A stretch of DNA of 64,000 bases from IMGVR_UViG_3300042549_005931:124001-188000; one strand, 5' to 3'. Shown: positions 16,068-59,377, numbered from the stretch's first letter. Made by a program: numbers and translations. The notes: a model not told the origin generated them from the letters alone.

Positions 16068-18002
16068 TTAAGCGTATTCTCTTGGGTTTACAGTCCTTGC
16101 AGCAAAACCGACTGCCGCATTTTTTCTTGCAGCTTCCGCAAATATGTCACCACCAGGATTTGATATAATATTGTGAGTATATTCAACTTTCTGTGGTGAT
16201 TGTTGTTGTACCGAAGCTATTGGATTTGGTGTCATTGTTTTTGTTAAATTATCTCTAATTATTTTTGCCTTCTCCATCCAACTTTCATAACTTGTTACGT
16301 CTAAATCTTTAATCGCATTAACAACATTTTTACCAGATTCTTGTGCCTTTTTAGGATTAGAGTCTAACTGTGTCTTTGATATTGTGTTCAGTAACTCTTT
16401 CATCTCTTTACCAAGTGCTGCCTCACCCATACCTTTTGCAAAATTTGCCGCCTGCACTTTAGCCCAAGTTGCCATAACCTCAATACCTTTTACCATTTGT
16501 TGAGTTTCTGTAAGTTGTTTCATCGCCATATCTTTAGGGCTCATATCTTCAAATGCCTTTTTGTTTGCCAATAACACATTCTTTTGTTCTTCGGTTAATT
16601 TAGATAATGTGATTTCACTTTGTTTACCTAATTTATCTTGTAAACTTTCAGGTACCACAATCTTCATTTCACCATCCTGCATTCTACTTAAGTTGGTAAT
16701 GAATTCTCTATCCTTATCGGTCATTGTTAATCCTCGAGACATTAGAGCTGTTGATGCTGCAACCCTTTCTTGTGCGGCAACTGCAGTTTTACCCAATTCT
16801 TCCATCGTCATACCTAACGCACTAGCCATTTCTCTTCCTCTTCTTAAGTTTATTCCTGTAATCTCAAATCTTCCTTGTGCTTGGTTATATGTTGCCAATC
16901 CTTTTGCCGCCCCAATTATCGAGTCTTGTAATCCCTCCATATTATTGGTAGATTCGTACATCATTTTTATTGGGTCACCCAAAGAACCTACAGCACCACC
17001 TAACACTTGTAATTTAGCCGCCATATCAATTGCACCATCAGGATTCATAACATCTTCAGCAACCTTAGCGACCTTATCCATACTTAATTTAAACTCAATG
17101 GATTTTTGAACCATTCTCTCTAAACCCTCAACACCGTTTTTAAAACCATATTCATTTAATTTACCGACACTATTTTTTATTTCAGTTGCAACCTTTGATG
17201 CATTTAATCCTAATGAAACTGACCTTGTTGCTGATTTACCAATAGCTTCTGTGGCTTCTTTAGCCCCAATACCAACTTTTTCATATTCACCAAGACTACC
17301 GGCCAATTCGGATAATGTCATGTTTAACGATGCTGCAACAGGTAATGCTTGTTCAATTGTTTGACTATTAATTAATGCAAATTTTCCTGATTGGTCAACT
17401 AAGGTTGTGTAGAACGAACCAATATCAGCTAATTCAAATCCATATCTTTTAGCCTCACCCTGAGCCGCAATCATTGACAGTTGGAGTCCGTCTGATAATT
17501 CACCACTAATACCTGTTTTTGTATTAATTTCCGACAATAAAACAGATTGTTCTTTTAATTGACCTAAAACCGCCTCACCTCCTTGTTTCGCTAACGACAT
17601 CGCTCCACCAAGAAAACCTTGCGTTTTTATTGTTTCTGCAATTTGTAAAAGAGTTTCATCACCTTGACCCTTACCTATTTGGGTCTCTAACGCCAATTTT
17701 GCTCCACCGGCAACAACTTTCACCGCACCATCAACAAGACCAAAAGCCGACTTTATACCACCGGTTAACGTGTTAATTGCATTTCCAACAAATCCTTTAT
17801 CACCAGTGGGTAATTCGGGTGTTTTGGTGAGACCACCACCAGTAAAACTTGTACTACTACCACTACTATTACCAATATTATTTTGCATTTTTTTAAATTG
17901 GTCATAAAGTTTACCCGCATTCGGGTCATTAGCGTTTTTGGAAATAAAATCACTTCTACTTGATGATTGATTAAATATGTCTAATGGAGTTAAGTTTGCC
18001 AT
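16068..18002 (-). CDS. tail tape measure protein
   Basis: Ala/Gly/Met-rich helical protein downstream of the tube and chaperone genes and upstream of the baseplate genes. Confidence 0.72.
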   Translation of the reverse strand: MANLTPLDIFNQSSSRSDFISKNANDPNAGKLYDQFKKMQNNIGNSSGSSTSFTGGGLTKTPELPTGDKGFVGNAINTLTGGIKSAFGLVDGAVKVVAGGAKLALETQIGKGQGDETLLQIAETIKTQGFLGGAMSLAKQGGEAVLGQLKEQSVLLSEINTKTGISGELSDGLQLSMIAAQGEAKRYGFELADIGSFYTTLVDQSGKFALINSQTIEQALPVAASLNMTLSELAGSLGEYEKVGIGAKEATEAIGKSATRSVSLGLNASKVATEIKNSVGKLNEYGFKNGVEGLERMVQKSIEFKLSMDKVAKVAEDVMNPDGAIDMAAKLQVLGGAVGSLGDPIKMMYESTNNMEGLQDSIIGAAKGLATYNQAQGRFEITGINLRRGREMASALGMTMEELGKTAVAAQERVAASTALMSRGLTMTDKDREFITNLSRMQDGEMKIVVPESLQDKLGKQSEITLSKLTEEQKNVLLANKKAFEDMSPKDMAMKQLTETQQMVKGIEVMATWAKVQAANFAKGMGEAALGKEMKELLNTISKTQLDSNPKKAQESGKNVVNAIKDLDVTSYESWMEKAKIIRDNLTKTMTPNPIASVQQQSPQKVEYTHNIISNPGGDIFAEAARKNAAVGFAARTVNPREYA

Positions 18003-18022
18003 ACATATAAATAGAAGAGTTA

Positions 18023-18181
18023 TTATTTTTCAGACTCTAATTCGATAATATAATTTACGTAATATCTTCTAATAAAAATAGGCATAGAAAGAATATCACC
18101 ATATGTGAATCCTTTCTTAACTAAAAATAAAATTTCGTCTAATTGATTTTTTCTATATTCCGAAGAAAGGGCGAAAAAATT
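18023..18181 (-). CDS. start-less 52-codon frame (gp51-like / gpT-type chaperone extension), probably reached by frameshift
   Basis: Open frame NFFALSSEYRKNQLDEILFLVKKGFTYGDILSMPIFIRRYYVNYIIELESEK fills the gap; no ATG/GTG/TTG before codon 33; overlaps the 3' end of 18153..18902. Confidence 0.75.
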   Translation of the reverse strand, partial: NFFALSSEYRKNQLDEILFLVKKGFTYGDILSMPIFIRRYYVNYIIELESEK

Positions 18182-18902: not shown

Positions 18903-18950
18903 AACCTATAATTTATATAATATATAGTTGAAAGTCAAGTTTTTGAGCAT

Positions 18951-18999: not shown

Positions 19000-19017
19000 A
19001 AATAAATTTTTAAAATA

Positions 19018-19506
19018 TTAGTAAACTTGAATACATCTATCCATTCTCAAGTTACAAGTAATTGAAGCAATGGCGTCTTGACTATAATCCAAACTACCAA
19101 AATCTAAACTTGTTAAGAATGTTCCTTGGATAATCCATTTTTCCACAACAACACCTGTTGGGTCTAACATTTCTAATTCAATATCTTTCTTATATCCAGC
19201 AGCATAACCCATACGACCAGTTACTGATTCTGCATGTAAACGAAACCATTCCATCAATGCTTGTGAAGCTGAAGGTCCAATTGGGTCCTTAAACGTAACA
19301 TTCATTTCATCCCAAGTAAATCTACCAGCAACATATGTTGATGTATTTAAAAAAGGAATTTCAGTTGAAGTAATTTTAGCTGAAGGTCTTTTAGTTGATG
19401 TTACATACCATTCATTGATACCCATAGAAGAAGGGAATCTTAGAATAAATCTATTTTGTCTTTTCGGTTCAAATGGAACCGGCATTTTCATTAGTAAATC
19501 TGCCAT
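19018..19506 (-). CDS. tail tube protein (T4 gp19-like)
   Basis: FEPKRQNRF, YVAGRFTW, YKKDIELEMLDPTGVVVEKW; directly downstream of the sheath. Confidence 0.92.
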   Translation of the reverse strand: MADLLMKMPVPFEPKRQNRFILRFPSSMGINEWYVTSTKRPSAKITSTEIPFLNTSTYVAGRFTWDEMNVTFKDPIGPSASQALMEWFRLHAESVTGRMGYAAGYKKDIELEMLDPTGVVVEKWIIQGTFLTSLDFGSLDYSQDAIASITCNLRMDRCIQVY

Positions 19507-19626
19507 TTTGTATTTGTTAAATTTTTCTTTATTTTACTCTTATAAATATATAATATTTAAAAAAGTCATTTATTTTCTATTAATTATTTGACTTTGTCGT
19601 TTTTTTTGTTTAGTTTTTTACAAACA

Positions 19627-19739
19627 CCCAGTATTACTAGTTCCAGTATAACTTAATTTCTTTTATTTTACTAGAAAATTATTAATAATAAAGCTTATTA
19701 ATATAAATACTAGTATTACTAGTTCCAGTTTATACTGGG
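19627..19739. repeat. intergenic direct and inverted repeat element
   Basis: AGTATTACTAGTTCCAGT at 19630-19647 and 19712-19729; terminal inverted CCCAGTAT/ATACTGGG; central TATTAATAA/TTATTAATA. Confidence 0.85.
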
Positions 19740-19740
19740 C

Positions 19741-19770: not shown

Positions 19771-19787
19771 ATTCCCTTTAATTCATA

Positions 19788-22715
19788 TTAGATATTCTCG
19801 AATGATGCTCCTGTTGGAGTAATGATGAATTCTAAGTCAATAAATTCAAGTGCTCTCGTTGGCTTGATATAAATCTTACCTCTTAAAGTATTTGCATCAA
19901 TGTCCTCAGGGTCATTAGATACTGTAACTTTGAATTCATTTAAACCTCTTTCTTTCTTAATTGAATCCAAGATAGGATTAACCAATCTCAAGAACTCATT
20001 TCTTACTTGTTCGTCATTTTGTTCGAATAGTAATCTAACTGCTACTGCTGAAATTAACTTTCTTGCTCTTAACAATAATCTTCTTACGTTGATTCTGTCT
20101 AATGCAGATTCTTTAACTTGTAAAGTTTTGTTACCCCAAATGATTGTACCTGTATCAGCAAATGTTGCGATAGGGTTAATTCTATTTTTGTATAACTCAT
20201 CTCTTTCATCAAGTGTTAATTTTTTAGTTGCTTTGATTGCATTTACTAAACCTCTTGAATAACCTGCCGGTGCAAACCAAGGATACGCTACGTTATCTGT
20301 CAACGCGATGTTCTTTAATACTTCACCTGTTGGTGGGATGTAAAGTTGTGTTGAGTTATCAGTATCTTTTATTTGAACCCAAGGCCAATATGTTGCTGAA
20401 TAATTAGAGTCAATTGACATATTATCTAATTCACTTGCAATATCATCAGCGGTTGTGATATATTCAGGACCCGGAGCGTTTATTACGTATAATGAATCAG
20501 CTCTATCGTTTTCCACCATATCAATCGCATTAGAAACTAATGAACCATGATTTGACCAATCGATACCCGGTGTTGCGAATAAGTTAATATCAACAGCTTC
20601 AGGATTAGAGAATGTTTGAATACCTTGTAAGTAAGCGTAGTAGTCTGAGTTAGGTGAACCATCGGTGGTTACCTTAAACACACCACCATTATCAGTATTA
20701 CCACTTGTGTAAGTCGCTCTACCTAAAACAAATGCATCTGTATTTGTTCTTGTGTTTCTATAGATATCCCAACCATCAAATCCACCAAACAATGCAAATG
20801 TAAATTTACGATAATTGATATTTGTTAATTTATTATCTGTACCTGTTTGACCTTCTAAATCGTATGGTGTTGTTTGGAACTCAAATGATGGTATTGTATT
20901 ACCAGTAGCCTCACCTATTGTTGCTGCGTTAGATGATAAATGGAAACCATAAGTTACCGTATCCCCACTTACTCCTTTGAATTTCAATAAGTCACTATCA
21001 AATCCAACCTGTGTAGACAATCCTAACATTACCTTTTTAACTTTATCTCCACTTGTAGTATTTGGTACACCTGATGTACTGTAACCTGTTACATCACCCG
21101 CATCATAATATTGTGTTTTAAAAAGTACACTACCTAATGTATTACCATTATCATTGGTGAATGAACTAAAACCCTTGAAACCTGCCGGTATTGCATCTGT
21201 TGGATGATTGTCAGCTAAAATAATTGATACATATTTTGAACGTAATTCATAATCACCATCCGAAGTACCAATTTTTCTACCAATATAGCCGGTCGCCTCA
21301 GGATTCATTGAACATCTTGAATATTTCTCTAATACCACCATATTTTCGTCGGTATCACCATAATCACGAATTAATAAATCAAATTCCGCCGTGTCTAAAT
21401 TAATGTTAATTACAGAAATTTTCAATTGGAAGTTAGCGTCTTCACCATCTGAAATAGTTTGTAATTGGAATAAATCGGATACATTTCCACCACGTACCTC
21501 AGATACAACCATTGGTGATACAGTAGTATCCCACTCAGTTGCAAAATTACTTGTCTCAGAAGTATCTGTTAAAGATGAAACATCTAAACCTCTAATATAT
21601 CCTTTTTCAAAAGCGGTTGCCAATAATTTTGGATAAACTTCGTGTACATATAACGGGAAATCAGAAGCCGATTTATCGAATACTTTTCCACCTAATACTT
21701 TCTTAATGTATTTTGAAGATGATGTGTCTAATGAACATACGAATGAAGTTCCACCCGTAACGGTTGCCCCTGTTACGTTAATTACAAACTCACCTAATGG
21801 ATTAGTTGATAAATCAAAACCCGTATTATCAGAAATCGATACTTGAGTTGAACCAGTAACTTCAAGATTTAATTGTTGGGTAACACCATATGAACCACGT
21901 GGTCTTAATGCCGTAACAACAATTCCATCATAATCTGTATTTAAAACCGCATCAAATGAAAATCTTGTTACGTTAAAAATATTAGCACCACTACTCCATT
22001 CAAATAAGTATGAATAAACCGTGTCAGTACCATCGTTATATGTGTTATACCAGTTTTTATTATATGTTGATGATGCATAATTTGCACCCGTCATTGGTGA
22101 TACCACTTCAGTACCTGTCGGAATTTCAGCAGTTGGGATAACCCCAATTGCAAACCATAGACCAGTATTACCTGTTAGACCACTATATGTTTCATAAATG
22201 TAGTCAGTTACGGTACTACCATCAAAAGCCATCTTAGTTGAAAGTTCAGCATAATATGTACTACCTGTAAATCCTGATAATGGATTTGGGTCCATATTTT
22301 CAGTTACACCTGTAATCACATTATCCAACCATTGGTCTTCCAACGTCGCACCTGTTGCAACTACCGGTGAAAATCCACCTAATGTTGTGATACCTAAAGT
22401 AATATTAGGTTTATATCCAGTTAAACCAAGTACTCTTGTTACGAATAATTGATTTGACTCTTGTAAATAAGATTTTGCTACGTAAGGTAACTCATATTTT
22501 GGATTGTTGTTTCCGAATTTCTCAGGAGACGTTCCACCAAAATAAGTTTTGAATTCGTCGAAATTAGAAATTAAAATTGGTTCAAATGCTGGACCTTTTA
22601 ATGTCTCACCAACTAATCCCAATGTTGTTACTCCGACACTTTGCGCTACGAATGTTAAGTCTTTCTCGGATGTATAAACACCGGGAGAAACGAATACTCT
22701 GTTTGAATTTGCCAT
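19788..22715 (-). CDS. tail sheath protein (T4 gp18-like)
   Basis: VSPGVYTSEKDL N-terminus; YSATYWPW, WFAPAG..RG, WGNKTL, RINVRRLL, FEQND C-terminal domain. Confidence 0.96.
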   Translation of the reverse strand: MANSNRVFVSPGVYTSEKDLTFVAQSVGVTTLGLVGETLKGPAFEPILISNFDEFKTYFGGTSPEKFGNNNPKYELPYVAKSYLQESNQLFVTRVLGLTGYKPNITLGITTLGGFSPVVATGATLEDQWLDNVITGVTENMDPNPLSGFTGSTYYAELSTKMAFDGSTVTDYIYETYSGLTGNTGLWFAIGVIPTAEIPTGTEVVSPMTGANYASSTYNKNWYNTYNDGTDTVYSYLFEWSSGANIFNVTRFSFDAVLNTDYDGIVVTALRPRGSYGVTQQLNLEVTGSTQVSISDNTGFDLSTNPLGEFVINVTGATVTGGTSFVCSLDTSSSKYIKKVLGGKVFDKSASDFPLYVHEVYPKLLATAFEKGYIRGLDVSSLTDTSETSNFATEWDTTVSPMVVSEVRGGNVSDLFQLQTISDGEDANFQLKISVININLDTAEFDLLIRDYGDTDENMVVLEKYSRCSMNPEATGYIGRKIGTSDGDYELRSKYVSIILADNHPTDAIPAGFKGFSSFTNDNGNTLGSVLFKTQYYDAGDVTGYSTSGVPNTTSGDKVKKVMLGLSTQVGFDSDLLKFKGVSGDTVTYGFHLSSNAATIGEATGNTIPSFEFQTTPYDLEGQTGTDNKLTNINYRKFTFALFGGFDGWDIYRNTRTNTDAFVLGRATYTSGNTDNGGVFKVTTDGSPNSDYYAYLQGIQTFSNPEAVDINLFATPGIDWSNHGSLVSNAIDMVENDRADSLYVINAPGPEYITTADDIASELDNMSIDSNYSATYWPWVQIKDTDNSTQLYIPPTGEVLKNIALTDNVAYPWFAPAGYSRGLVNAIKATKKLTLDERDELYKNRINPIATFADTGTIIWGNKTLQVKESALDRINVRRLLLRARKLISAVAVRLLFEQNDEQVRNEFLRLVNPILDSIKKERGLNEFKVTVSNDPEDIDANTLRGKIYIKPTRALEFIDLEFIITPTGASFENI

Positions 22716-22759
22716 TGATTAATGTTTGGTTAAAATTTTTTTATTAGTTTTATTATAAA

Positions 22760-22839
22760 TATCTTTGTTTTTACCAAAGATTTCGATACTTTTCACATAA
22801 AAGATAGTAAATTATCTTTTTCTATCTTTATTTATCTTT
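22760..22839. promoter_or_regulatory. TATCTTT operator-like array between the divergent sheath and RHH genes
   Basis: TATCTTT at 22760, 22813, 22823 and 22833; inverted copies at 22776-22781 and 22800-22806. Confidence 0.6.
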
Positions 22840-22840
22840 T

Positions 22841-22999
22841 ATGGAAGAAAACAAATCTAAAAACGTAAAAATCAGTGAAAAACACCATGAGATGTTAAAA
22901 AACCACTGTGAAAAAAATGGATTAAAAATTTATAAAGTTTTAGAAAGGTGGATTGAAGATTATTGTAAACCCAAAAAGAAAGATATCTACGGTGATTAG
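22841..22999 (+). CDS. small ribbon-helix-helix DNA-binding protein (52 aa, not in ORF track)
   Basis: MEENKSKNVKISEKHHEMLKNHCEKNGLKIYKVLERWIEDYCKPKKKDIYGD: alternating beta strand, helix, Gly turn, helix; TATTTATC 4 nt before the ATG. Confidence 0.75.
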   Translation: MEENKSKNVKISEKHHEMLKNHCEKNGLKIYKVLERWIEDYCKPKKKDIYGD

Positions 23000-24760: not shown

Positions 24761-24810
24761 ATCCTTATAAATAGTAGATTTTTACGAACTTATTATTTAT
24801 ATTATAAATT

Positions 24811-26761: not shown

Positions 26762-26798
26762 ATCTTAAATATAAAGTATTTATAAGAATAAATCAATT

Positions 26799-30874: not shown

Positions 30875-30889
30875 TTACAAATATAAATA
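30875..30889 (-). promoter_or_regulatory. composite promoter TATTTATATTTGTAA upstream of DNA polymerase
   Basis: Overlapping TATTTATA and TATATTTG; the same 15-mer occurs upstream of bS21. Confidence 0.6.
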
Positions 30890-32085: not shown

Positions 32086-32098
32086 TTAGATAAATAGT

Positions 32099-33211: not shown

Positions 33212-33264
33212 ATTTTAATAAATATCTTTCATTTGGTTTGATATTTATATAAAAAATATATCTA

Positions 33265-39534: not shown

Positions 39535-39566
39535 ACTTATAGATTATTTAATTGTATATTTCCTAT

Positions 39567-41501: not shown

Positions 41502-42280
41502 AAAATATAACAGTTATTTTACCCATCCATAGATTAGATGGTAACTATAAAGAAATGTTTAGCAACGCAATTGAATCTTTAAAAGATTTCCATAATGACG
41601 TTAAACTATCTATCGTATGTCCAAACGATGTCAATATTACCCAAGAATTAAGTTCCATTACAAGTAATTTAGAAATTAATACTTTAACACATAATGGTCC
41701 TACCGATTTTTGTTCCCAAATTAATTATGGTGTTGAAAATTGTGATACAGAATGGTTTTCAATTTTAGAAATTGATGATGTTTATAAACCGATATGGTTA
41801 AAGTCAATGAATGAATATGTAAACATTTATCCAGATGTTTCAGTGTTCTTACCAATTGTAAAAGATATTAATGAAGAAGGTAAGTTTGTTAGTTTCACTA
41901 ACGAATCTACATGGGCTTACGGATTTAGTGAAAGACAAGGATTTTTAGATAATGAAGTATTGTTAGATTTCCAAAACTATCAAACAAGTGGTGGTCTTTA
42001 TAAAACACAAGTTATTAAAGATAATGGTTTATTTAAGGACAATATCAAATTAACTTTTAGTTACGAGTTCTTATTACGTTTAACACATAATGGTGTTGCG
42101 ATTATGACAGTACCTAAAATCGGATATCAACACGTAAATTTTAGAGAAGATTCATTATTTTGGAGTTATCAAAATGAAGGTACTAAACTATCTGAAAAAG
42201 AAGCTAAGTTTTGGTTGGAAACTTCTAAGAAAGAATTTTTCTTTAAGAATAAACGTGAGATTGAATATGTAGAAGCTTAA
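41498..42280 (+). CDS. glycosyltransferase family 2 (GT-A fold)
   Basis: ITVILPIH, INYGV...DTEWFSILEIDD, YEFLLRL. Confidence 0.85.
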   Translation: MKNITVILPIHRLDGNYKEMFSNAIESLKDFHNDVKLSIVCPNDVNITQELSSITSNLEINTLTHNGPTDFCSQINYGVENCDTEWFSILEIDDVYKPIWLKSMNEYVNIYPDVSVFLPIVKDINEEGKFVSFTNESTWAYGFSERQGFLDNEVLLDFQNYQTSGGLYKTQVIKDNGLFKDNIKLTFSYEFLLRLTHNGVAIMTVPKIGYQHVNFREDSLFWSYQNEGTKLSEKEAKFWLETSKKEFFFKNKREIEYVEA

Positions 42281-42978
42281 TGCCAAGAAAAAGAACCCAA
42301 AAGATATACTTTGGGGAGGAACAAGAACAAGCGGTAGTACGATATTTAGAATCCGATTCCGATATAGAAAGAAACAAGATATTCAATGAATATTTAAGAG
42401 ACCCCCTCGTTATAATGGTTGAATCAATTATTCGACGTTATAAATTATATAGAAAAGACTTAGAATTTGAAGACATACATTCAGATACTATGTCTTTTCT
42501 TATTACCAAAATTAATAAGTTTGACCACACTAAAAACCATAAGGCATATTCTTACTTTGGAACTATTTGTAAGAATTACCTTATGGGTGCCATACAAAAA
42601 GATACCAAAGAAACTAATCGTAGTGTGTCTTATGATGATATTTCATCTGACATCGAGGATAGGGCCGATTTATCTTATGTTATCGATGAGTACGTAATTG
42701 ACTATAGAGATGTTATCATTAAATTGACAATGTCTTTAGAAGAATTTATGGAAAGTGAACAACTAACGGATAATGAACAAAAATTAGGATACGCTTTACT
42801 TGAAATCTTTAGTAATTTTGATAAAATTTTTCAAGTTGGTGACGGAAATAAATTTAACAAAAATCTTATTTTATTGTCATTGAGAGAAATGACATCACTA
42901 TCCACTAAGGAAATTAGAATATCCTTAAAAAGATTTAAAAGAATGTATGACGGTATTTTAGGTGGATTTTTAGAATAA
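42280..42978 (+). CDS. phage RNA polymerase sigma factor (T4 gp55-like late sigma)
   Basis: Region 2-like EDIHSD...LITKINKFD..K.HKAYSYFGTICKNYL. Confidence 0.75.
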   Translation: MPRKRTQKIYFGEEQEQAVVRYLESDSDIERNKIFNEYLRDPLVIMVESIIRRYKLYRKDLEFEDIHSDTMSFLITKINKFDHTKNHKAYSYFGTICKNYLMGAIQKDTKETNRSVSYDDISSDIEDRADLSYVIDEYVIDYRDVIIKLTMSLEEFMESEQLTDNEQKLGYALLEIFSNFDKIFQVGDGNKFNKNLILLSLREMTSLSTKEIRISLKRFKRMYDGILGGFLE

Positions 42979-42992
42979 ATCTATTTATTACT

Positions 42993-48395: not shown

Positions 48396-48409
48396 AAATA
48401 TTTATTAAT

Positions 48410-49811: not shown

Positions 49812-49838
49812 TTAAACATACTTTCATATATTTGTCAC

Positions 49839-50437: not shown

Positions 50438-50465
50438 ATTACAAATATACCAAAAAATTGATAAT

Positions 50466-52277: not shown

Positions 52278-53456
52278 TTATTTTATTTTTGACATCAAAT
52301 CCTTCATTCTTTTGAATTGTGGATTTTCGTACGCCTTTGATTCCGCTAACATTTCTTTAGAAGATGATGTTGTTGGAGTGTTAGAAATTTTATTAGCCAC
52401 TGTTTCTGTTATAGGGTTTTTAGTTTCTAACTCATTTTTTATTGTATTGAAAAGTGCTTTTGATTCGTTCATATTATTGATACCATCAAATCTCTTCAAT
52501 ATGTTTAATTTTTCTTGTTTTGTAGTTGAATGTTCTGTGAACAAACGAGTTGAATATGCTAAGTTTGCGTTGAAAACTGCAACCTCGTTAAGTTTTTCCT
52601 TGAATAAAACTAAGGCTTTCTTATATTCACCATTTTGTTTTTTCAATTTTTCAACTTCTTCGTTAATTGCTCCTGAACCTGCTTTGTATTTTGTTTTACT
52701 ATCTAAACCAGCTCTGTCTTGACCACCTTTGTTGCCATGTACATTTGATTTAGTTCTTGCAGCTTCTTCCATTTCTTCTTCTTTAGAATCATCATCTTCT
52801 TCATCTAATTCGATTTCGTAGATAACCTCATCCTCAGTCATTTCAACGTCATAAGACATATCATCACCTTCTAACATATCATCATCATCATATGACATAT
52901 CATCTTCTTCGGCAATCTCTTCACCATCTTCGTCATCGAGTTTAATGATATAATCATTATCTCCATCACTGAAGTGAACAGAGTCACCATCTTTCTTTAC
53001 GATAATACCATCTTCAGGTTTCATAGCTTTGAATACTTTCATTACTTCTTCATCAGAAGCTCCTGTCATATCCATTGCATCATCTTCATCTTCAAAAGGA
53101 TTCTCATCTTCTTCACTTTCTGAAGAATACTCATCGTCTTCTCCTTCTTCTGAATCTAAATCTTCACCTTCCTCAGAATCTAATCCTGCTGGCATTTCGT
53201 TATCAAGGTTTTCTTCTCCTTCAGCATCTTCAGCACCTTCTTCATCGGCACCTTCGTCTGACATGTCATCTGTTTCCTCTTCTTCAGGATTTGGTTGCTC
53301 AGCAACGTCTTCCTCTTTTTCCATACTTTCTTTAAGCAAGTCATTTAGTTCTTGTTTCATTGTTGAAGCAAGTATACCCTTTGCATTTTGCTTTACTGCT
53401 TCTTCAAGTGTTTGTACTTGAAGTAACGCTTGTTCTAAAATTGATTTTTCAGTCAT
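52278..53456 (-). CDS. prohead core / scaffolding protein (gp22-like)
   Basis: Highly acidic with coiled coils; lies between protease and MCP. Confidence 0.8.
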   Translation of the reverse strand: MTEKSILEQALLQVQTLEEAVKQNAKGILASTMKQELNDLLKESMEKEEDVAEQPNPEEEETDDMSDEGADEEGAEDAEGEENLDNEMPAGLDSEEGEDLDSEEGEDDEYSSESEEDENPFEDEDDAMDMTGASDEEVMKVFKAMKPEDGIIVKKDGDSVHFSDGDNDYIIKLDDEDGEEIAEEDDMSYDDDDMLEGDDMSYDVEMTEDEVIYEIELDEEDDDSKEEEMEEAARTKSNVHGNKGGQDRAGLDSKTKYKAGSGAINEEVEKLKKQNGEYKKALVLFKEKLNEVAVFNANLAYSTRLFTEHSTTKQEKLNILKRFDGINNMNESKALFNTIKNELETKNPITETVANKISNTPTTSSSKEMLAESKAYENPQFKRMKDLMSKIK

Positions 53457-53537
53457 TTTTTTGTTTTATTATCTTATAAATACTATGGTTTTATTAAAAA
53501 ATCTCTTTTAACGGGGTCATAAACAAAATAAAATCTA

Positions 53538-54221
53538 TTATTTAGATAAAAATTTGTCTAAACCACCCATTAATTTTTTCATTCTGTCATTAAGTTCAGG
53601 TTTCTCTTGTATAGACTCTTGATATTGGTCTCTATCTGCTGGGTCATTAAATACATATGCCCCCGGTGTAGATGGAGACGACACTAAGTCAAAACATACT
53701 AATTCAAAATCATCTTGAACAATATTTTGACCTCTTTCACTTTTTAATGAACCAACACCACGTGATGATATACCTAAAGTTGCACCATTCATGATTAACA
53801 TTGCCGCTTGGTCACCTTTAGTAGAAACAATACCCATCTTCTTCCAACCTGGAGAAGTGAATAACTTTATTTTACCCATTAATATTTTTCCATCCCAATA
53901 TGTTTCAAGAATTGAATGGGATACTCTATCTAAGTCGATAAGAGATGATGATGGGTGATTTAACTCATTAAGAGCACCACCTTTTTTAATAAGTGTTTGA
54001 TATTTTTCTACTTCTCTTTTAAGAAGCATTTCAGGATAGATTCTCCCGTTCTTATTTGGTGTATCGTATTTCTGTAAAACAGCATAAAGGATAAGGTCTT
54101 CTGAAAAGTCCATATCCCTCATCTCTGATATAATTTTTTTATTGTCGTCAGGGGACACATGACCCGCGTCATATTCAATAAGAATACCTTTCCCTGTTTC
54201 GTTCGGACCTAAAATCTTCAT
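53538..54221 (-). CDS. prohead protease (T4 gp21-like)
   Basis: NKNGRIYP, ELNHP, VSH, GISSRGVGS, DLVSSPSTPGA. Confidence 0.95.
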   Translation of the reverse strand: MKILGPNETGKGILIEYDAGHVSPDDNKKIISEMRDMDFSEDLILYAVLQKYDTPNKNGRIYPEMLLKREVEKYQTLIKKGGALNELNHPSSSLIDLDRVSHSILETYWDGKILMGKIKLFTSPGWKKMGIVSTKGDQAAMLIMNGATLGISSRGVGSLKSERGQNIVQDDFELVCFDLVSSPSTPGAYVFNDPADRDQYQESIQEKPELNDRMKKLMGGLDKFLSK

Positions 54222-54256
54222 TTATAGTTTTTACTATAAATACATCGATAATTAAG

Positions 54257-54682
54257 TTATTTCTTTGTTTTGTGAAAATTGTATAAATTTTTGTTAGTTA
54301 AACTATCATCAATTATACCCGAAATTAATTTTTTGATTGTATTTTTTATATCTTTTGTTTTAATATCAAATTGATTTTCAACAAAAAGTGTAATCTCTAA
54401 GTTCATAAAGGACCTTTTTTCAAGTTTTATTCCTTTTGTTCTTATATCCAAATCAACAATACATTGTTGTTTAAATAATGGATTTCTTAATTCGTAAATT
54501 GAATCTTTTATTTTACGTCTTGTTTTAAAAATTGATGAGTCGAAATCATCAGTTTCGTTTTCGGGTTGAACCCACGAATTTAATTTTAAGTAAACGGTTT
54601 TTAAATTTTTGTAATCAACGGTACCATAACCAATTTTTACGTTATTGTATTCCCCTAAAGGGATATACTTTCCTATTTTCAT
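54257..54682 (-). CDS. hypothetical protein (141 aa)
   Basis: Intact ORF divergent from bS21. Confidence 0.7.
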   Translation of the reverse strand: MKIGKYIPLGEYNNVKIGYGTVDYKNLKTVYLKLNSWVQPENETDDFDSSIFKTRRKIKDSIYELRNPLFKQQCIVDLDIRTKGIKLEKRSFMNLEITLFVENQFDIKTKDIKNTIKKLISGIIDDSLTNKNLYNFHKTKK

Positions 54683-54755
54683 TAACTTTTCATATTATTA
54701 TATTTTTATGGTGTATTCAAAATATAAGTAAAAAAAATTTAAATACAAAAAAATA

Positions 54756-54770
54756 TATTTATATTTGTAA
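54756..54770 (+). promoter_or_regulatory. composite promoter TATTTATATTTGTAA upstream of bS21
   Basis: TATTTATA 54756-54763 overlapping TATATTTG 54760-54767. Confidence 0.6.
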
Positions 54771-54787
54771 TATAAACTAATTTCCAT

Positions 54788-54976
54788 ATGTTAATTGTTG
54801 ATTTAAGTAAAGAAAAAAGTATTGAGAGTGCTTTGAGAACTTTTAAGGGTAAAGTTTTAAAAACTAAGCTTGTTCAAAAATTAAGAGAAAGACAAGAGTT
54901 CACAAAACCCTCAGTTACTAAGAGAAAACAGAAATTGAAAGCTGTTTATCTACAGAAAAAAAATGGTCTTGATTAA
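54788..54976 (+). CDS. rpsU: ribosomal protein bS21 (phage-encoded)
   Basis: IESALRTFK.KV.KT......RERQEFTKPSVTKR...KAVY, Bacteroidota-type bS21. Confidence 0.93.
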   Translation: MLIVDLSKEKSIESALRTFKGKVLKTKLVQKLRERQEFTKPSVTKRKQKLKAVYLQKKNGLD

Positions 54977-54991
54977 ACAAGACCATTTTTT
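54958..54991. terminator. bidirectional terminator spanning two convergent stop codons
   Basis: AAAAAATGGTCTTG-ATTAAA-CAAGACCATTTTTT perfect 14-bp stem. Confidence 0.75.
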
Positions 54992-55710
54992 AATTGTACC
55001 AATCTGTAATAATTAAATTTCGATGGTTTCATTTCATTAACCTCGTCTTTTACTTTGGTTAATTTACCGGTTAAATCATTATCTTTAGACTCACTCAGGA
55101 TATTACCTACTTGACCTAAAATAGATTCTTTTAAATCACTTATTTTAACTTCAAGGTCTTCGTCCGTTAAAGATAAAATACCCTGTAATTCTTTTTTCTG
55201 TGATTCATTTAATGAATTATTATATAATACATTAAAATTGTTTGCTAATACTGCATATAGAAGATTTTCATTTTCTACTAATTGTGTTTCTTCTTTTTTA
55301 ACGATTTCTTTTTTTGTTGTTAAATGTTCTACTAATTTTTTCTTCGCAATAATTTTTTTGTCAACATTACTTAAATTTTCTTCTTGAACTAATAAGTCTA
55401 AGTTTGAATATAATTCGTTTTCGTTAATTTCTACGTTTTTTAACTTTGTATTTAAATTTTTTGTGAAACTTGCGATTTTATCTGACTTGTCTTTTAAGAC
55501 CGATTGAATTTCTTCTACATACAGTTTAGCTATTTCTTTATCATCGAAGTATTTGTTTTCGATTTCTTCATAAAACAAATACATTTCTTTGAAATCTTTG
55601 TTTTCTTTAATTGTATTTAAGATATCCTTAACTTCACCTTTATTCTTGTTTGAATAAGATTCAGTTAGTTTCTTTAATATCTTTGTTTTTAATATTCCAA
55701 ATTTGTTCAT
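54973..55710 (-). CDS. head-module hypothetical protein (245 aa)
   Basis: Helical K/E-rich ORF directly downstream of portal; LTE, LNE, LKE and LSE sites. Confidence 0.7.
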   Translation of the reverse strand: MNKFGILKTKILKKLTESYSNKNKGEVKDILNTIKENKDFKEMYLFYEEIENKYFDDKEIAKLYVEEIQSVLKDKSDKIASFTKNLNTKLKNVEINENELYSNLDLLVQEENLSNVDKKIIAKKKLVEHLTTKKEIVKKEETQLVENENLLYAVLANNFNVLYNNSLNESQKKELQGILSLTDEDLEVKISDLKESILGQVGNILSESKDNDLTGKLTKVKDEVNEMKPSKFNYYRLVQLKNGLV

Positions 55711-55712
55711 TT

Positions 55713-57527
55713 TTAGTCGTTTAATATGTCTGTTATTTTAGTTTCTATTTCATAAATATTCTGTTGTGCTTTATTCATATCAAATAAGATATTAAAATCT
55801 TCTTTTTCCTCACCTAACATACCTAATATTTTTGATTTTCTTGAAGTAGATTCACTTAATGGTTCCGCAGCAGGTGCTTCGGCAGGTGCTCCACCACCCA
55901 TATCCATTCCACCACCGGCAGCAGCTTCACCACCACCTGCGGCAGCTTCAGCCTTTTCTCTTTCTTCCTCAGGGATACCATACTTAGCATCCACATTGTC
56001 GAAGATACCTGAACGTTTAATGATTAACTGACTCGTATTCATTAATTCGAAACCAACCGCTCTTTCAAGACGTTGTTGTTGTAAATCAAGTAATACTTCA
56101 GCATCACTCATACCAAGAATATTTTTCTTAGCCCATGTATGAGACACCGGTAAAATACCCATTTGAGATTGGTCAGATGTTGCATCCTTATAAAGAGTAA
56201 CCTTTTCTTTCCATTGTTCAATACGTAATAAATCAGATTGTGCTGATGGATTAGTTAAACCTAACGTAAAGTTATTTAATTCATCCTCTAAACCTAATAG
56301 ATACAAGTGAACTAATGCTATTTTATTTAACTCTTGAATAACTGATTTTTGAATTCTGTTAATTGTACGAGCAAAACGAATATCCATTAATGCTAAACTC
56401 TTACCTTCACCAACAACCTCTTCAAAACCTAAGAAAGCTTTTGGTATACGTAAAGCTGCAAGTAGTTTCTTTTGAATATATTCAATATCGGCAATTTCAC
56501 CTAAGTTTGTTGCTCCGGGTAATGTATCGATTGGACTTGGAGCTGCAGGGTCACGTACAGGGATAAAATAATCTTGGTCTACTGACATTTGATTATATCT
56601 CATATCTACCTGACCATTACGTGGGTCGGATATTTGGTCTCTTTTGAATTTACTTGCCACACGTTGTACATAAGCTTCAATATCTTTATCATCCATGTTA
56701 CCCACAAATATTTTAAAGATACGTCTTTCAGGTGCTCTTGATGTTCTATAAATTAACATCGCATCTTCAGCAAGAAGTAATTGTTTCCAAATACGTCTAA
56801 TCTTATCTAACATAGAAGTACCATAAGGTAATTTTCTATCGTCACCTAAAATTCTAAAGTGTGCAACTTCCCAAGCTTGGAATTCCATATCTTTATTCTT
56901 CCAATGGAATCTCAATTCACGTGACGGCATTTTAACATCTCTAGCTTGTCCCGCAGTTTTACTTGATGCGCCTTCCAATCTTTCAATTTCAATGTTTGGT
57001 AATTGTTGACACCCAATGATACCCTTTTCAGGGTCAATTTTTAAGTATACAAAGTTATCCCCATACTTACATAGACCTCTTGTCCACATTTGTAAGTTGG
57101 TGTTAACATCTAATACGTTTTTGAATAAGTCATCAAGGATATTCTTTACTCTTGTTGATTCAGAAAATATTGTTAATATTTCACCCTTCTCAGACATTGT
57201 GGTTGATTCTTCAGCATAGATATCTAAAGCTGCGGAAATCTCCGGAGTAAATTCCATAGATTCATAATCATAATATGCAGCCAATCTATTTGGTTCGTAA
57301 TAAACCGATTGGTTATATAATGATTGGTCAAGTTTAGCCCATTTATCAGCAATGTACTGACTTTGTTGAGCTTGTAATAACGCCTTTTCGTATTCTTCTC
57401 TACTATCGGTCTTTAATAATTCGTCTTTTGAGAAACTAAATGATGGTACTTGGTCGGGTCTTGTTTTCCCCGGATATCCAAACATCTTGGTCAATTTCTG
57501 AAAAACTGTAAAATTCTGTTCTGCCAT
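55713..57527 (-). CDS. portal protein (T4 gp20-like)
   Basis: PEISAALDIYAEE, EDAMLIYRTSRAPERRIFKI.VGN, DYFIPVR, IDTLPG, ALRIPK. Confidence 0.96.
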   Translation of the reverse strand: MAEQNFTVFQKLTKMFGYPGKTRPDQVPSFSFSKDELLKTDSREEYEKALLQAQQSQYIADKWAKLDQSLYNQSVYYEPNRLAAYYDYESMEFTPEISAALDIYAEESTTMSEKGEILTIFSESTRVKNILDDLFKNVLDVNTNLQMWTRGLCKYGDNFVYLKIDPEKGIIGCQQLPNIEIERLEGASSKTAGQARDVKMPSRELRFHWKNKDMEFQAWEVAHFRILGDDRKLPYGTSMLDKIRRIWKQLLLAEDAMLIYRTSRAPERRIFKIFVGNMDDKDIEAYVQRVASKFKRDQISDPRNGQVDMRYNQMSVDQDYFIPVRDPAAPSPIDTLPGATNLGEIADIEYIQKKLLAALRIPKAFLGFEEVVGEGKSLALMDIRFARTINRIQKSVIQELNKIALVHLYLLGLEDELNNFTLGLTNPSAQSDLLRIEQWKEKVTLYKDATSDQSQMGILPVSHTWAKKNILGMSDAEVLLDLQQQRLERAVGFELMNTSQLIIKRSGIFDNVDAKYGIPEEEREKAEAAAGGGEAAAGGGMDMGGGAPAEAPAAEPLSESTSRKSKILGMLGEEKEDFNILFDMNKAQQNIYEIETKITDILND

Positions 57528-57580
57528 TTATATAAATACTTTTTTTTATAATATAAACTAAATTATTAGTAATGGAAATA

Positions 57581-59365
57581 TTATTTTTTTCTTCCATTAA
57601 ACAACCATGAGTATTCCATATATGCTTCTCTACCAACTTGTTGATTAGTATTACCCCCATACATTGAATTGCTACTATCCATACCCATAGAACCTATTTG
57701 GTCAAATGACCCACCATATGAATAAAAAGATTTTTGTGGCTCATACGTTCTTTCAGACATTGTCCATGATTCAATCATTGCTCTATTAACTGATTCGGTT
57801 TTTTGTAATTGATTGAAACATAAATCACCAGCATATAATGCCATTGACATACTCATAATAGCATCATCGTGAGAACCTTTCATGTGGTCAGGTCTTCCGT
57901 TCATATAAACAAACGTATTAAGTTCATTTAATAGTCTACTTGACCTAACTTGAAAACCTTTTCTTAATTGTTCTTCAAATGCCGCAACAATCTGCGTTCT
58001 TTTATTGTTAAAGTTAAGACCGGGTATTTTTTCCATGGCCTTAGCGTTATATTCCCAAATGTTTTGAGTATTAACACCATCAATATAAATATTTTTATAA
58101 TTTAACTCTTGTAATTTTCTTGATGTTGCAACACCCATACCACCGGTGATATCAATAACGATAAAAGCGTTACCATATATCACACCCCACTTATACGCAA
58201 TTTGTGCCAAATCGTCCGGTGGTATCTTACCAATATATTCAAGTACTTGTTCTCTATCATCAAAATCGACAATACTAATTGCTGAAAAGTCTTCACTATC
58301 ACCTCTACTAACATCGACACCCATAATATAACGGTGACCTTCAATTGGTTCTTTCCACTGCCATAATGTAGCTTGCATGTATTTCTCAATAGGAACACGA
58401 ATCATGTTCTTAGAAATATTCTCTTGAACAAAACCCGGTATAACACCATCACCCGAACCCAAGAAGTCACACTCTAATTCTTGTGAAATTTTACGTCTAT
58501 CGTATTTGAACTTTTTAGACATAGACTCAAACCAAGATGAATATGGTTTATAACCCTGTTCTTCCAATTCTTTATAATTGGACATATCAAACTCATAAAT
58601 AACAACTTCGTTATCATCATATTGTTCTCTGTTTAACATGTAATGACATATATCCTGACATTTAACCCATCGTAAGTCTTTGGTATAACGAGGGTCTTTA
58701 AACCACCTTAAATCTGTTATGTGGAAATCATTAATTCCACGAATAGCTTGGTCGTATACACCATAATAAATTGGGTCGTAACCATTTGGAGTTGAGATTA
58801 GAATAATCTTACCACCCGTAGATAGGGAGGCCATAGATGCAGCCCAAAAATCTTCTCCTGCTTCAATATATGCAGCCTCGTCAAATACAAGTACGGTAGG
58901 TGTAAAACCACGAAGTGCATCCGCAGATGTTGCAACAGCTTTAACTTCGGAACCGTTATTTAATCTAAATCTACTCTCAGAGTTTTTATCGGGTGAAAAT
59001 CCAACATTAATCCATTCGGGCCATTGGTCTAAGAAGTTTCTAATCTTATTAGCCATTTCCACGGCGGTATCTTTCTTATTGGCAATAATCAAAACTCTTT
59101 CAGGATTTTCTGGTTTGGCAAATTGTAATTTCTTTGATAACCAAGCGGCTGTTACGGTTGTTACACCGGCCTGACGATATTTCTTTGTGATGTTTTCGTT
59201 ATAATCTTCGTAATCTTGAATTAATTGTAATTGGTCAGGAAATAGGTTCATTGGAACGAATTTCTTTTGCGTGTTATCGTATGTTTGTAGATACGTTCTT
59301 AACGCATATGGTGTATCTTTAATGATACGGGCATATTCTTTTAGTTGTTCTAATTTACTATTCAT
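57581..59365 (-). CDS. terL: terminase large subunit (T4 gp17-like)
   Basis: KYRQAGVTT, DEAA, ISTPNG, QELEC.F, GVDVSRG, HDDAIM; start reassigned to MNSKL (59365). Confidence 0.96.
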   Translation of the reverse strand: MNSKLEQLKEYARIIKDTPYALRTYLQTYDNTQKKFVPMNLFPDQLQLIQDYEDYNENITKKYRQAGVTTVTAAWLSKKLQFAKPENPERVLIIANKKDTAVEMANKIRNFLDQWPEWINVGFSPDKNSESRFRLNNGSEVKAVATSADALRGFTPTVLVFDEAAYIEAGEDFWAASMASLSTGGKIILISTPNGYDPIYYGVYDQAIRGINDFHITDLRWFKDPRYTKDLRWVKCQDICHYMLNREQYDDNEVVIYEFDMSNYKELEEQGYKPYSSWFESMSKKFKYDRRKISQELECDFLGSGDGVIPGFVQENISKNMIRVPIEKYMQATLWQWKEPIEGHRYIMGVDVSRGDSEDFSAISIVDFDDREQVLEYIGKIPPDDLAQIAYKWGVIYGNAFIVIDITGGMGVATSRKLQELNYKNIYIDGVNTQNIWEYNAKAMEKIPGLNFNNKRTQIVAAFEEQLRKGFQVRSSRLLNELNTFVYMNGRPDHMKGSHDDAIMSMSMALYAGDLCFNQLQKTESVNRAMIESWTMSERTYEPQKSFYSYGGSFDQIGSMGMDSSNSMYGGNTNQQVGREAYMEYSWLFNGRKK

Positions 59366-59369
59366 ATAG

Positions 59370-59377
59370 TATAAATA
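59370..59377 (-). promoter_or_regulatory. putative late promoter TATTTATA (one representative of about 20 copies)
   Basis: 4 nt before the TerL ATG and directly after a terminator; see findings for the other copies. Confidence 0.7.

What the first reader, a model, noticed from the sequence alone, without database searches (positions are those of the whole stretch)
18002..59377. Two spacing classes imply many leaderless mRNAs
Seen: the motif-to-ATG distance is only 3-5 nt for tape measure (3), RHH (4), gp14-like (5), fibre (3), 33211 (5), 42993 (3), 48410 (3), portal (3) and TerL (4). It is also 4 nt for the host-type TATATTT(G/C/A) element before dCMP deaminase, 49839, 39567 and 26761. High-copy proteins have long A-rich leaders (sheath 38, tube 34, scaffold 18). 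No SD motifs are evident. Inference: low-copy virion parts are made from leaderless transcripts and high-copy parts from leadered ones, so stoichiometry is encoded in leader length, possibly interacting with the phage bS21.
Basis: partly seen in the sequence, partly recalled or inferred. Interest (0 to 1): 0.62.

Follow-up and report, generated by a model that had tools for sequence, protein, structure and literature searches.

The report
Phage promoter box abutting start codons
A freshwater jumbo phage of Bacteroidetes carries an 8-base promoter-like box (TATTTATA/T) that in about a third of cases sits only 3-6 bases before the start codon, conserved gene by gene in relatives; this predicts many leaderless mRNAs, but no transcript 5' ends could be mapped here.

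Summary
Observation confirmed. The window lies in a 269-kb IMG/VR freshwater myophage of the published bS21-phage group.

The box TATTTAT(A/T):
- It is the most enriched upstream word: 44 forward, 8 reverse, 2 expected.
- 82 of 126 copies lie in the 6.9% of the genome that is intergenic.
- It is depleted inside genes on both strands and has no -35 partner.

Box-to-ATG distance has a sharp peak at 3-4 nt. No copy lies at 1-2 nt, and a broad continuum runs from 8 to about 40 nt.

The spacing class is conserved per gene across relatives:
- Portal: 3-5 nt in 52 of 52 unique upstream sequences.
- TerL: 3-6 nt in 41 of 41.
- Protease: 13-20 nt. Scaffold-like gene: 17-27 nt.

TerL's box sits between a covarying terminator and an invariant ATG.

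Best reading: a T4-late-like, -10-only phage promoter, possibly read by a phage sigma factor. The short class would then yield leaderless or near-leaderless mRNAs. This is inferred, because no 5' ends could be mapped.

The stoichiometry rule is only anecdotal. The long class also holds helicase, DNA polymerase and a 1605-aa protein. The bS21 link is unsupported; bS21 itself has a host-type promoter.

The parts
18006..18013 (-). Box TATTTATA, 3 nt before ATG 18002 of the 644-aa tape-measure-like gene (16068-18002). Short class.
   Evidence: The tape-measure assignment is only a lead (atlas 0.92 to PhageMin_Tail/TMP_3). No PHROG or Pfam hit.
22829..22836 (+). Box variant TATTTATC, 4 nt before ATG 22841 of a 52-aa Arc/RHH-like ORF. 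Short class.
   Evidence: PHROG Arc-like repressor, E = 2.9e-4.
24766..24773 (-). Box, 5 nt before ATG 24760 of the gp14-like neck protein (24248-24760). Short class. Back to back with the helicase box.
   Evidence: Atlas 0.96-0.97 to PF11649 T4_neck-protein. Orthologs have d = 5 and 4.
24794..24801 (+). Box, 9 nt before the helicase gene (24811-26562). Intermediate spacing.
32089..32096 (-).
   Evidence: No family hit.
33217..33224 (-). Box TATTTATT, 5 nt before ATG 33211 (370 aa, unknown function). Divergent partner of the box at 33242-33249 (+), which lies 15 nt before ATG 33265.
42280..42978 (+). Divergent sigma-70-family gene (232 aa), gp55-like by sequence. Candidate reader of the box.
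   Evidence: Pfam Sigma70_r2 24.4 bits, cut-off 24. PHROG late sigma factor, E = 1.8e-4. Best PDB sequence hit T4 gp55 7d7c_F, E = 1.2e-3. A low-confidence AF2 model gives only sigma factors as weak top hits.
42982..42989 (+). Box TATTTATT, 3 nt before ATG 42993 (126 aa), packed into the 14-nt gap after the sigma gene. Short class.
   Evidence: In 79 of 79 related loci (44 unique sequences) d = 3 (54), 4 (23) or 5 (2).
48399..48406 (+). Box TATTTATT, 3 nt before ATG 48410 (170 aa). Short class.
57531..57538 (-). Box, 3 nt before the portal ATG 57527 (55713-57527). Short class.
   Evidence: 52 of 52 unique ortholog upstream sequences have d = 3-5. The ATG is invariant and codon periodicity starts at codon 2.
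59370..59377 (-). Box, 4 nt before the TerL ATG 59365 (57581-59365). Short class.
   Evidence: 41 of 41 unique orthologs have d = 3-6. The ATG is invariant.
59379..59405 (-). Intrinsic-terminator-like hairpin plus T-tract, ending 1 nt before the TerL box.
   Evidence: 36 of 36 unique orthologs keep a perfect stem of at least 6 bp. Several different stem sequences occur (GGAGG/CCTCC, GGTGG/CCACC, GGGAG/CTCCC, GACGG/CCGTC, GGGGG/CCCCC).
19541..19548 (-). Box, 34 nt before the tail tube gene (19018-19506). Long A-rich leader.
   Evidence: Orthologs 39 and 41.
22754..22761 (-). Box, 38 nt before the tail sheath gene (19788-22715). Long A-rich leader.
   Evidence: Orthologs 37 and 38.
53475..53482 (-). 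Box, 18 nt before the 392-aa scaffold-like gene (52278-53456). The MCP gene (50517-52241) follows it without a box of its own.
   Evidence: Orthologs 17-27 in 30 of 30; MCP has none in 27 of 27. Matches the co-transcription reported in PMC9723584.
54235..54242 (-). Box, 13 nt before the prohead protease gene (53538-54221).
   Evidence: Orthologs 13-20 in 40 of 40.
30882..30889 (-). Box, 64 nt before the DNA polymerase gene (27920-30817).
   Evidence: Not conserved in the two relatives compared.
15993..16000 (-). Box TATTTATT, 15 nt before the 1605-aa gene (11160-15977).
   Evidence: Orthologs 14 and 6.
63629..63636 (-). Box, 34 nt before a 400-aa gene of unknown function (62392-63594).
   Evidence: Orthologs 35 and 37.
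50442..50449 (-). Host-type -7 box TATATTTG, 4 nt before the dCMP deaminase ATG 50437.
49827..49834 (+). Host-type -7 box TATATTTG, 4 nt before ATG 49839 (54-aa ORF).
39555..39562 (+). TATATTTC, 4 nt before ATG 39567 (215 aa). Deviates from the host consensus at the last base.
26766..26773 (-). TATATTTA, 4 nt before ATG 26761 (68 aa). Deviates from the host consensus at the last base.
54760..54767 (+). Host-type TATATTTG, overlapping a phage box at 54756-54763, 20 nt before the bS21 gene (54788-54976).

Best explanation
TATTTAT(A/T) is most likely the single-element, -10-like promoter box of this phage clade. It is built like the T4 late promoter: an 8-bp TATA-type box with no -35 element. It is probably read by host RNA polymerase carrying a phage sigma factor. 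There are two candidates: the gp55-like 232-aa protein at window 42280-42978, and a SigA/RpoS-like 269-aa protein at G000:80206-81015.

Transcription is inferred to start about 4-6 nt after the box. In about a third of box-bearing genes the ATG lies 3-6 nt after the box. The RNA would then begin at, or within 1-2 nt of, the AUG. That would make leaderless or near-leaderless mRNAs, translated without any upstream ribosome-binding region. The remaining boxes give leaders of a few to about 35 nt, which are A-rich and SD-free as is usual in Bacteroidetes.

Shown here: the box, its statistics, its DNA-level avoidance inside genes, the spacing peak, its per-gene conservation, the true start codons, and the terminator insulating TerL.

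Inferred: the promoter function, which sigma factor reads it, the position of +1, and therefore the leaderless state.
For: Enrichment and orientation
- TATTTATA is the top upstream word: 44 forward, 8 reverse, 2 expected.
- 82 of 126 copies lie in the 6.9% of the genome that is intergenic.
- Inside genes there are 28 sense and 15 antisense copies, against 74 +/- 9 and 53 +/- 7 in codon shuffles. Avoidance on both strands argues for a DNA-level signal.
- No conserved upstream element.

Spacing
- This genome: d = 3 (9 genes), 4 (8), 5 (3), 6 (2); none at 1, 2 or 7.
- Three genomes pooled: 3 (18), 4 (21), 5 (8), 6 (4), 7 (4), 8 (1).
- p = 6e-10 for the 3-4 peak.

Conservation
- Portal 3-5 nt (52 of 52), TerL 3-6 (41 of 41), protease 13-20 (40 of 40), scaffold-like 17-27 (30 of 30).
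- The gene after the sigma gene: 3-5 nt in 79 of 79 loci.
- Ortholog class concordance: 11 short-short, 16 long-long, 2 crossed; Fisher p = 2e-6.

True start codons
- The ATG is invariant, and third-position variability starts at codon 2 in portal and TerL.

Insulation
- A covarying terminator hairpin ends 1-3 nt before the TerL box in 36 of 36 unique relatives.
- 12 box copies follow a co-oriented terminator-like hairpin within 30 nt.

Register
- Long-class sites have A at nt 5 and 6 after the box in 79% and 75% of cases.
- Short-class genes have T or C at -1 in 82%, against about 50% elsewhere.
- The host-type -7 box occupies -12..-5 in Flavobacterium psychrophilum (PMC9723704).

Other
- Sigma genes.
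- T4 late promoters are an 8-bp TATA box at the -10 position without a -35 element (PMC2988020; PMC7892883).
- Transcription units reported from RNA mapping in this phage group match the box positions: MCP with its upstream gene, and the region not transcribed as one operon (PMC9723584).
Against: - No 5' end was mapped. The only RNA data reachable were short metatranscriptome contigs of 100-300 nt, which cannot show starts.
- One of those contigs (X18, 53456-53574) runs across the scaffold-gene box. This could be read-through or DNA in the library.
- With strict T4 geometry (box centred about 10 bp upstream of +1), +1 would fall 1-3 nt past the A of the ATG for d = 3-4.
- Both sigma genes lie in units headed by the same box, so what reads it first is unclear.
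- The box also precedes replication genes, so 'late' may be the wrong label.
- No T4-type sliding clamp was found by Pfam.
- The gp55-like assignment rests on weak scores. The structure model was poor (pLDDT 60).
- Leaderless mRNAs are only about 5.5% in a characterised flavobacterium.
Confidence: 0.6

Rival explanations
1. Leader architecture is the main device that sets virion stoichiometry: leaderless for low-copy proteins, long A-rich leaders for high-copy proteins. Phage bS21 tunes the ribosome's choice between the two.
For: - Annotated short-class genes are low-copy or non-structural: TerL, portal, tape-measure-like, gp14-like neck, gp25-like wedge, Arc-like.
- Sheath, tube and scaffold/MCP have conserved leaders of 18-41 nt.
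- The class is conserved per gene.
Against: - The long or intermediate class also contains helicase (9 nt), DNA polymerase (64), a 1605-aa protein (15) and the protease (13).
- Most short-class genes are unannotated.
- No expression or proteome data exist for this phage.
- Leaderless mRNAs are not generally poorly translated outside E. coli (own knowledge).
- bS21 has a host-type promoter, and its own spacing class flips among relatives. Nothing ties it to either class.
Confidence: 0.25
2. The box acts in the RNA, not the DNA. It would be a translation enhancer or ribosome/bS21 recognition element, or a processing site for an RNase. Transcripts would start further upstream.
For: - The box is AU-rich and sits directly before start codons in a host lineage that does not use SD.
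- One RNA contig crosses a box.
- No TSS data exclude it.
Against: - In about 60% of cases the box lies 8-64 nt from the ATG, with no fixed spacing.
- It is avoided on the antisense strand of genes as strongly as on the sense strand.
- It follows terminators.
- TerL would need read-through of a conserved terminator whose hairpin lies about 15 nt before the ATG.
- Its form matches T4 late promoters.
Confidence: 0.12
3. The box is a promoter, but transcripts from short-class copies start at or beyond the ATG. They would serve downstream genes, and the adjacent gene would be made from upstream or read-through transcripts. The tight spacing would only reflect genome compaction.
For: - T4-type geometry would place +1 1-3 nt past the A for d = 3-4.
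- Some short-class boxes fill 14-nt gaps inside gene arrays (42982, 48399).
Against: - Compaction does not explain the hard lower limit of 3 nt or the mode at 3-4.
- It does not explain the pyrimidine at -1 (82%) or the matching A peak in long-class sites.
- TerL is followed by portal, which has its own box, and is preceded by a terminator.
Confidence: 0.12
4. Artefact: chance words in AT-rich spacers, or wrongly called start codons.
For: The genome is 32% GC and the intergenic DNA is AT-rich.
Against: - 81 intergenic copies against 26 +/- 5 in shuffles.
- 44 forward against 8 reverse.
- Per-gene conservation across relatives with portal proteins down to about 79% identical, and across other orthologs down to about 39%.
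- Invariant ATGs with codon periodicity from codon 2.

Confidence: 0.02

Closest known systems
T4 late promoters (TATAAATA box read by gp55, with gp33 and the gp45 clamp)
   Same: - An 8-bp TATA-type box at the -10 position, with no -35 element and AT-rich DNA downstream (PMC2988020, PMC7892883).
- 6 of 8 box positions are identical, in the same orientation.
- The phage has T4-like neck, wedge, sheath, portal and TerL genes, and a gp55-like sigma protein.
   Different: - The two central bases are TT instead of AA.
- No T4-type clamp was detected, and gp33 was not searched.
- T4 late mRNAs carry SD-bearing leaders (own knowledge). Here a third of boxes abut the ATG and SD is absent.
- The box also precedes replication genes.
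Bacteroidetes sigma-A promoters (-7 box TAnnTTTG, -33 TTTG)
   Same: - An 8-bp box starting with TA.
- The inferred register (+1 at about nt 5 after the box) equals the host's -12..-5 placement (PMC9723704).
- A few true host-type boxes in the phage also sit 4 nt before an ATG.
   Different: - The phage box fails the conserved TTTG (it has TATA or TATT).
- There is no -33 element.
- Host-type boxes in the phage mostly lie 16-40 nt from the ATG.
Leaderless gene architecture of Deinococcus, mycobacteria and other Actinobacteria (-10 element at a fixed short distance from the start codon; bimodal spacer pattern used by GeneMarkS-2)
   Same: A promoter element at a tight, short distance from an AUG, next to a leadered class in the same genome (PMC4007540, PMC4633059, PMC6028130).
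   Different: - In those organisms the state is proven by TSS mapping. Here it is inferred.
- Here it is a phage-specific box in a host phylum where leaderless mRNAs are about 5%.
bS21-encoding freshwater Bacteroidetes phages (Chen et al. 2022, PMC9723584)
   Same: - The same gene neighbourhood: bS21 on the reverse strand between portal/TerL and protease/MCP.
- The same habitat.
   Different: That study did not analyse promoters, leaders or start-codon context: 'promoter', 'motif' and 'UTR' each occur 0 times in its main text.

Membership tests
T4-type late transcription system | 8-bp AT-rich TATA-type box at the -10 position | tested here: met
   TATTTAT(A/T) shares 6 of 8 positions with TATAAATA. 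It is strongly enriched and oriented upstream of genes.
T4-type late transcription system | No conserved -35 element | tested here: met
   The logo of 64 sites shows no informative upstream column.
T4-type late transcription system | gp55-family sigma factor encoded by the phage | tested here: inconclusive
   The 232-aa protein scores Sigma70_r2 24.4 bits (cut-off 24), PHROG late sigma E = 1.8e-4 and PDB gp55 E = 1.2e-3. The AF2 model is poor (pLDDT 60). Foldseek gives only weak sigma-factor hits.
T4-type late transcription system | Sliding-clamp (gp45) and gp33 co-activation | tested here: not met
   No match to PF09116 or PF02916 in the 269-kb record. The record is about 81% complete and the proteins may be too diverged. 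gp33 was not searched.
T4-type late transcription system | Box restricted to late genes | tested here: inconclusive
   The box also precedes helicase and DNA polymerase. No time-course data exist.
Leaderless mRNA | Primary 5' end at, or within a few nt of, the start codon | not testable with these tools
   Only assembled RNA contigs were available.
Leaderless mRNA | Promoter -10 element at a fixed short distance from the start codon | tested here: met
   Peak at 3-4 nt, none at 1-2. Conserved per gene.
Leaderless mRNA | AUG start codon that is the real start | tested here: met
   The ATG is invariant in portal and TerL orthologs, with codon periodicity from codon 2. Other genes were called with ATG only, so they are not informative.
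Leaderless mRNA | No SD or other upstream ribosome-binding signal | tested here: met
   6 of 305 genes have GGAG/GAGG at -20..-4. TerL has a terminator hairpin and T-tract where a leader would be.
Bacteroidetes sigma-A promoter | -7 box TAnnTTTG | tested here: not met
   The phage box has A at position 6 and A or T at position 8. Only a minority of sites in the genome (46 upstream, weakly enriched) fit TAnnTTTG.

The most novel reading that the evidence does not exclude
A whole clade of freshwater Bacteroidetes jumbo phages expresses about one third of its transcription units as leaderless mRNAs from a T4-late-like box. It uses the leaderless/leadered choice as a conserved, gene-specific dial for protein yield. 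The phage bS21, made from a host-type promoter, shifts ribosomes between the two mRNA classes.
Probability: 0.12. Interest if true: 0.8.

Novelty: new variant of a known kind. Interest (0 to 1): 0.5.

Why it matters
Bacteroidetes do not use Shine-Dalgarno pairing, and how their phages direct translation is poorly understood. A conserved promoter box abutting a third of start codons gives a concrete, testable prediction: large-scale leaderless expression, in a phage group already noted for carrying ribosomal protein bS21. It also supplies an undescribed promoter consensus and two candidate sigma factors for this group. These improve gene-start and operon annotation of many related freshwater metagenome contigs. 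If confirmed, the group would be a natural system for comparing leaderless and leadered translation on SD-blind ribosomes.

Tried and rejected
- **RNA evidence.** Four metatranscriptome runs were laid on window 53420-59400 (5981 letters, within the operators' limit). Only contigs of 100-300 nt came back, many from 90-95% relatives. They give no information on starts.
- **Close relatives in GenBank.** Megablast against GenBank phages found no match.
- **Consensus fold of TerL upstream regions.** RNAalifold found no pairs because MAFFT shifted the 5' arms. I replaced it with a per-sequence stem search.
- **Function of short-class genes.** PHROG and Pfam were mostly blank for them, so the stoichiometry rule could not be tested broadly.
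- **T4 sliding clamp.** No Pfam match.
- **Structure of the gp55-like protein.** The alignment was shallow (80-90% identity) and the model poor. Foldseek gave no hit at E <= 0.001.
- **Literature.** No paper in the library combines TATTTATA with phage promoters. None links leaderless mRNAs with crAss-like or Bacteroidetes phages.
- **Rejected: mis-called starts** **and chance**.
- **Not done.** The large protein searches were not used, as the operators advised. No alternative genetic code was used.

Full report
**What the window is**

The 64-kb window is bases 124001-188000 of a single 269,133-bp IMG/VR virus record. The record is 32% GC, linear, and about 81% complete by CheckV. Near-identical DNA occurs in lake-water and freshwater metagenomes from several studies.

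Gene content is that of a distant T4-like myophage:
- sheath, tube, baseplate hub, a gp14-like neck protein
- portal, TerL, prohead protease, major capsid protein
- helicase and DNA polymerase

A ribosomal protein bS21 gene lies at window 54788-54976 on the opposite strand, between the portal/TerL genes and the protease/capsid genes. This is the arrangement described for the bS21 phages of freshwater Bacteroidetes (PMC9723584). That paper contains no promoter, motif or UTR analysis.

'The motif' is TATTTAT(A/T). That includes the Arc-like 52-aa ORF at 22841, the gene at 32085 (both with TATTTATC), and the four TATATTT(G/C/A) elements 4 nt before the ATGs at 50437, 49839, 39567 and 26761. SD motifs are absent: 6 of 305 genes have GGAG/GAGG at -20..-4, against 14 in a control window.

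Genome-wide, the box is the top enriched word upstream of genes:
- TATTTATA occurs 44 times in gene orientation and 8 times reversed, with 2 expected.
- 82 of 126 copies lie in the 6.9% of the genome that is intergenic.
- Intergenic copies number 81, against 26 +/- 5 in shuffles.
- Inside genes the box is depleted on both strands: 28 and 15 observed, against 74 +/- 9 and 53 +/- 7 after codon shuffling.

**The spacing distribution**

- In this genome the distance from box end to ATG is 3 (9 genes), 4 (8), 5 (3) and 6 (2). None lie at 1, 2 or 7. A broad spread follows, from 8 to 38.
- Pooled with two related contigs of 217 and 136 kb: 3 (18), 4 (21), 5 (8), 6 (4), 7 (4), 8 (1), then a continuum.
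- The 3-4 peak has p = 6e-10 against a uniform spread.

So there is one sharp class and one broad class, rather than two discrete ones.

**Conservation**

Among IMG/VR relatives with portal proteins 79-100% identical, counted on unique upstream sequences:

| Gene | Box-to-ATG distance | Unique sequences |
|---|---|---|
| Portal | 3-5 nt | 52 of 52 |
| TerL | 3-6 nt | 41 of 41 |
| Protease | 13-20 nt | 40 of 40 |
| Scaffold-like | 17-27 nt | 30 of 30 |
| Capsid gene | no box | 27 of 27 |

- The gene after the sigma gene keeps 3-5 nt in 79 of 79 loci.
- Across whole-contig orthologs, some only 39-45% identical, the class is kept in 27 of 29 pairs (Fisher p = 2e-6).
- The bases between box and ATG vary, but the spacing does not.

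**Are the ATGs real starts?**

In portal and TerL orthologs the ATG is invariant. From codon 2 onward the third positions vary while the first and second positions are conserved. The next in-frame ATG is not conserved. Mis-called starts are therefore excluded for these two genes.

**Promoter or RNA element?**

Several results point to a DNA-level promoter:
- The box is orientation-specific.
- It has no fixed distance to the ATG in most cases.
- It is avoided on both strands inside genes.
- It has no -35 partner.
- It often follows terminator-like hairpins.

TerL is the clearest case. In 36 of 36 unique relatives a perfect GC-containing stem plus T-tract ends 1-3 nt before the box. The stems use several different sequences that keep pairing. 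TerL mRNA must therefore start in the roughly 12 nt between terminator and ATG, or arise by read-through.

The form matches T4 late promoters: an 8-bp TATA box at the -10 position, no -35 element, and AT-rich DNA downstream (PMC2988020; PMC7892883). Six of the eight bases are the same.

The phage encodes two sigma-family proteins:
- Window 42280-42978 (232 aa): Sigma70_r2 just over the cut-off, PHROG 'late sigma transcription factor', and best PDB sequence hit T4 gp55.
- G000:80206-81015 (269 aa): SigA/RpoS-like, with regions 2 and 4.

Both are conserved in relatives. A structure model of the first was poor (pLDDT 60). It gave only weak matches, nearly all to sigma factors. Which of the two reads the box is open.

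**Where would +1 be?**

This step is inferred.
- In long-class sites, A reaches 79% and 75% at nt 5 and 6 after the box, against about 55-60% nearby.
- In short-class genes the A of the ATG falls at nt 4-6.
- The base before the ATG is T or C in 82% of short-class genes, against about 50% in other genes. This is the usual pyrimidine(-1)/purine(+1) start preference.
- The host-type -7 box occupies -12..-5 in Flavobacterium psychrophilum. That also puts +1 at nt 5 (PMC9723704).
- Strict T4 geometry would put +1 slightly further downstream, which is a caveat.

If the inference holds, about 36% of box-bearing genes give leaderless or 1-2-nt-leader mRNAs. That compares with 5.5% leaderless mRNAs in that flavobacterium, and with none reported among the early TSSs mapped for phiKZ or among the mapped AR9 transcripts.

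**Stoichiometry and bS21**

Annotated short-class genes are low-copy or regulatory:
- TerL and portal
- a tape-measure-like protein (lead only)
- the gp14-like neck protein
- a gp25-like wedge protein
- an Arc-like protein

Sheath, tube and scaffold/capsid have conserved long A-rich leaders. However, the long class also includes helicase, DNA polymerase, the protease and a 1605-aa protein, and most short-class genes are unannotated. The rule is plausible but not established.

Nothing links bS21 to either class. Its own gene is preceded by a host-type TAnnTTTG box 16-20 nt upstream in 28 of 45 unique relatives. Its neighbours never have one.

**RNA data**

Six metatranscriptome runs hold parts of the region. 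Only assembled contigs were served. They are short, partly from diverged relatives, and cannot show starts.

**Verdict**

- The sequence observation is real, statistically strong and conserved in evolution.
- The most likely mechanism is a T4-late-like phage promoter placed directly at the start codon of about a third of its genes, yielding leaderless mRNAs (confidence 0.6).
- It is a new variant of known kinds: T4-type late promoters and leaderless gene architecture.
- The stoichiometry and bS21 extensions remain speculation.

Noticed in passing
window 54760-54767 (+), upstream of bS21 (54788-54976): The phage bS21 gene is preceded by a host-type -7 box (TATATTTG), 20 nt before its ATG. In 28 of 45 unique relatives a TAnnTTTG box lies 16-20 nt upstream. 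Portal, TerL, protease and scaffold genes never have one. bS21 may therefore be transcribed by unmodified host polymerase, possibly early, rather than with its late neighbours.
   Followed up: partly
window 42280-42978 (+) and G000:C1:80206-81015 (-): Two phage sigma-family genes. One is gp55-like and highly conserved (80-90% identity in 80 relatives). The other is SigA/RpoS-like with regions 2 and 4. Both lie in units headed by the TATTTATA box.
   Followed up: partly
window 57550-57558 (-), 11 nt upstream of the portal box: A second conserved element, GTTTATATT, is kept in nearly all portal relatives, while the flanking intergenic bases vary. It is not seen at other box sites. It could be a portal-specific regulator site or a second promoter element.
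   Followed up: no
window 19630-19650 and 19712-19732, flanking the box at 19702-19709 (-): A 21-nt direct repeat (95% identical, 82 nt apart) brackets an 'orphan' box. The box lies between the sheath terminator and the tube promoter, with no ORF of note behind it. It may be a small RNA or a regulatory module.
   Followed up: partly
window 24766-24801 and 33217-33249: Two back-to-back divergent box pairs, 20 and 17 nt apart. Each pairs a short-class gene with a 9-15-nt-class gene on the other strand.
   Followed up: no
window 62392-63594 (-): A 400-aa protein without any family hit. It has a sheath/tube-like long leader (34 nt; 35 and 37 in relatives) and the same ATGGCAGAT start as the tube gene. 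It may be an abundant virion protein.
   Followed up: no
window 58084-58091 (-), inside TerL: One of the rare intragenic boxes. It is followed after 3 nt by an out-of-frame ATG opening a 38-codon ORF.
   Followed up: no
whole record G000: Codon 2 is GCA (Ala) in 18% of short-class and 22% of long-class box-bearing genes, against 4% of genes without a box.
   Followed up: no
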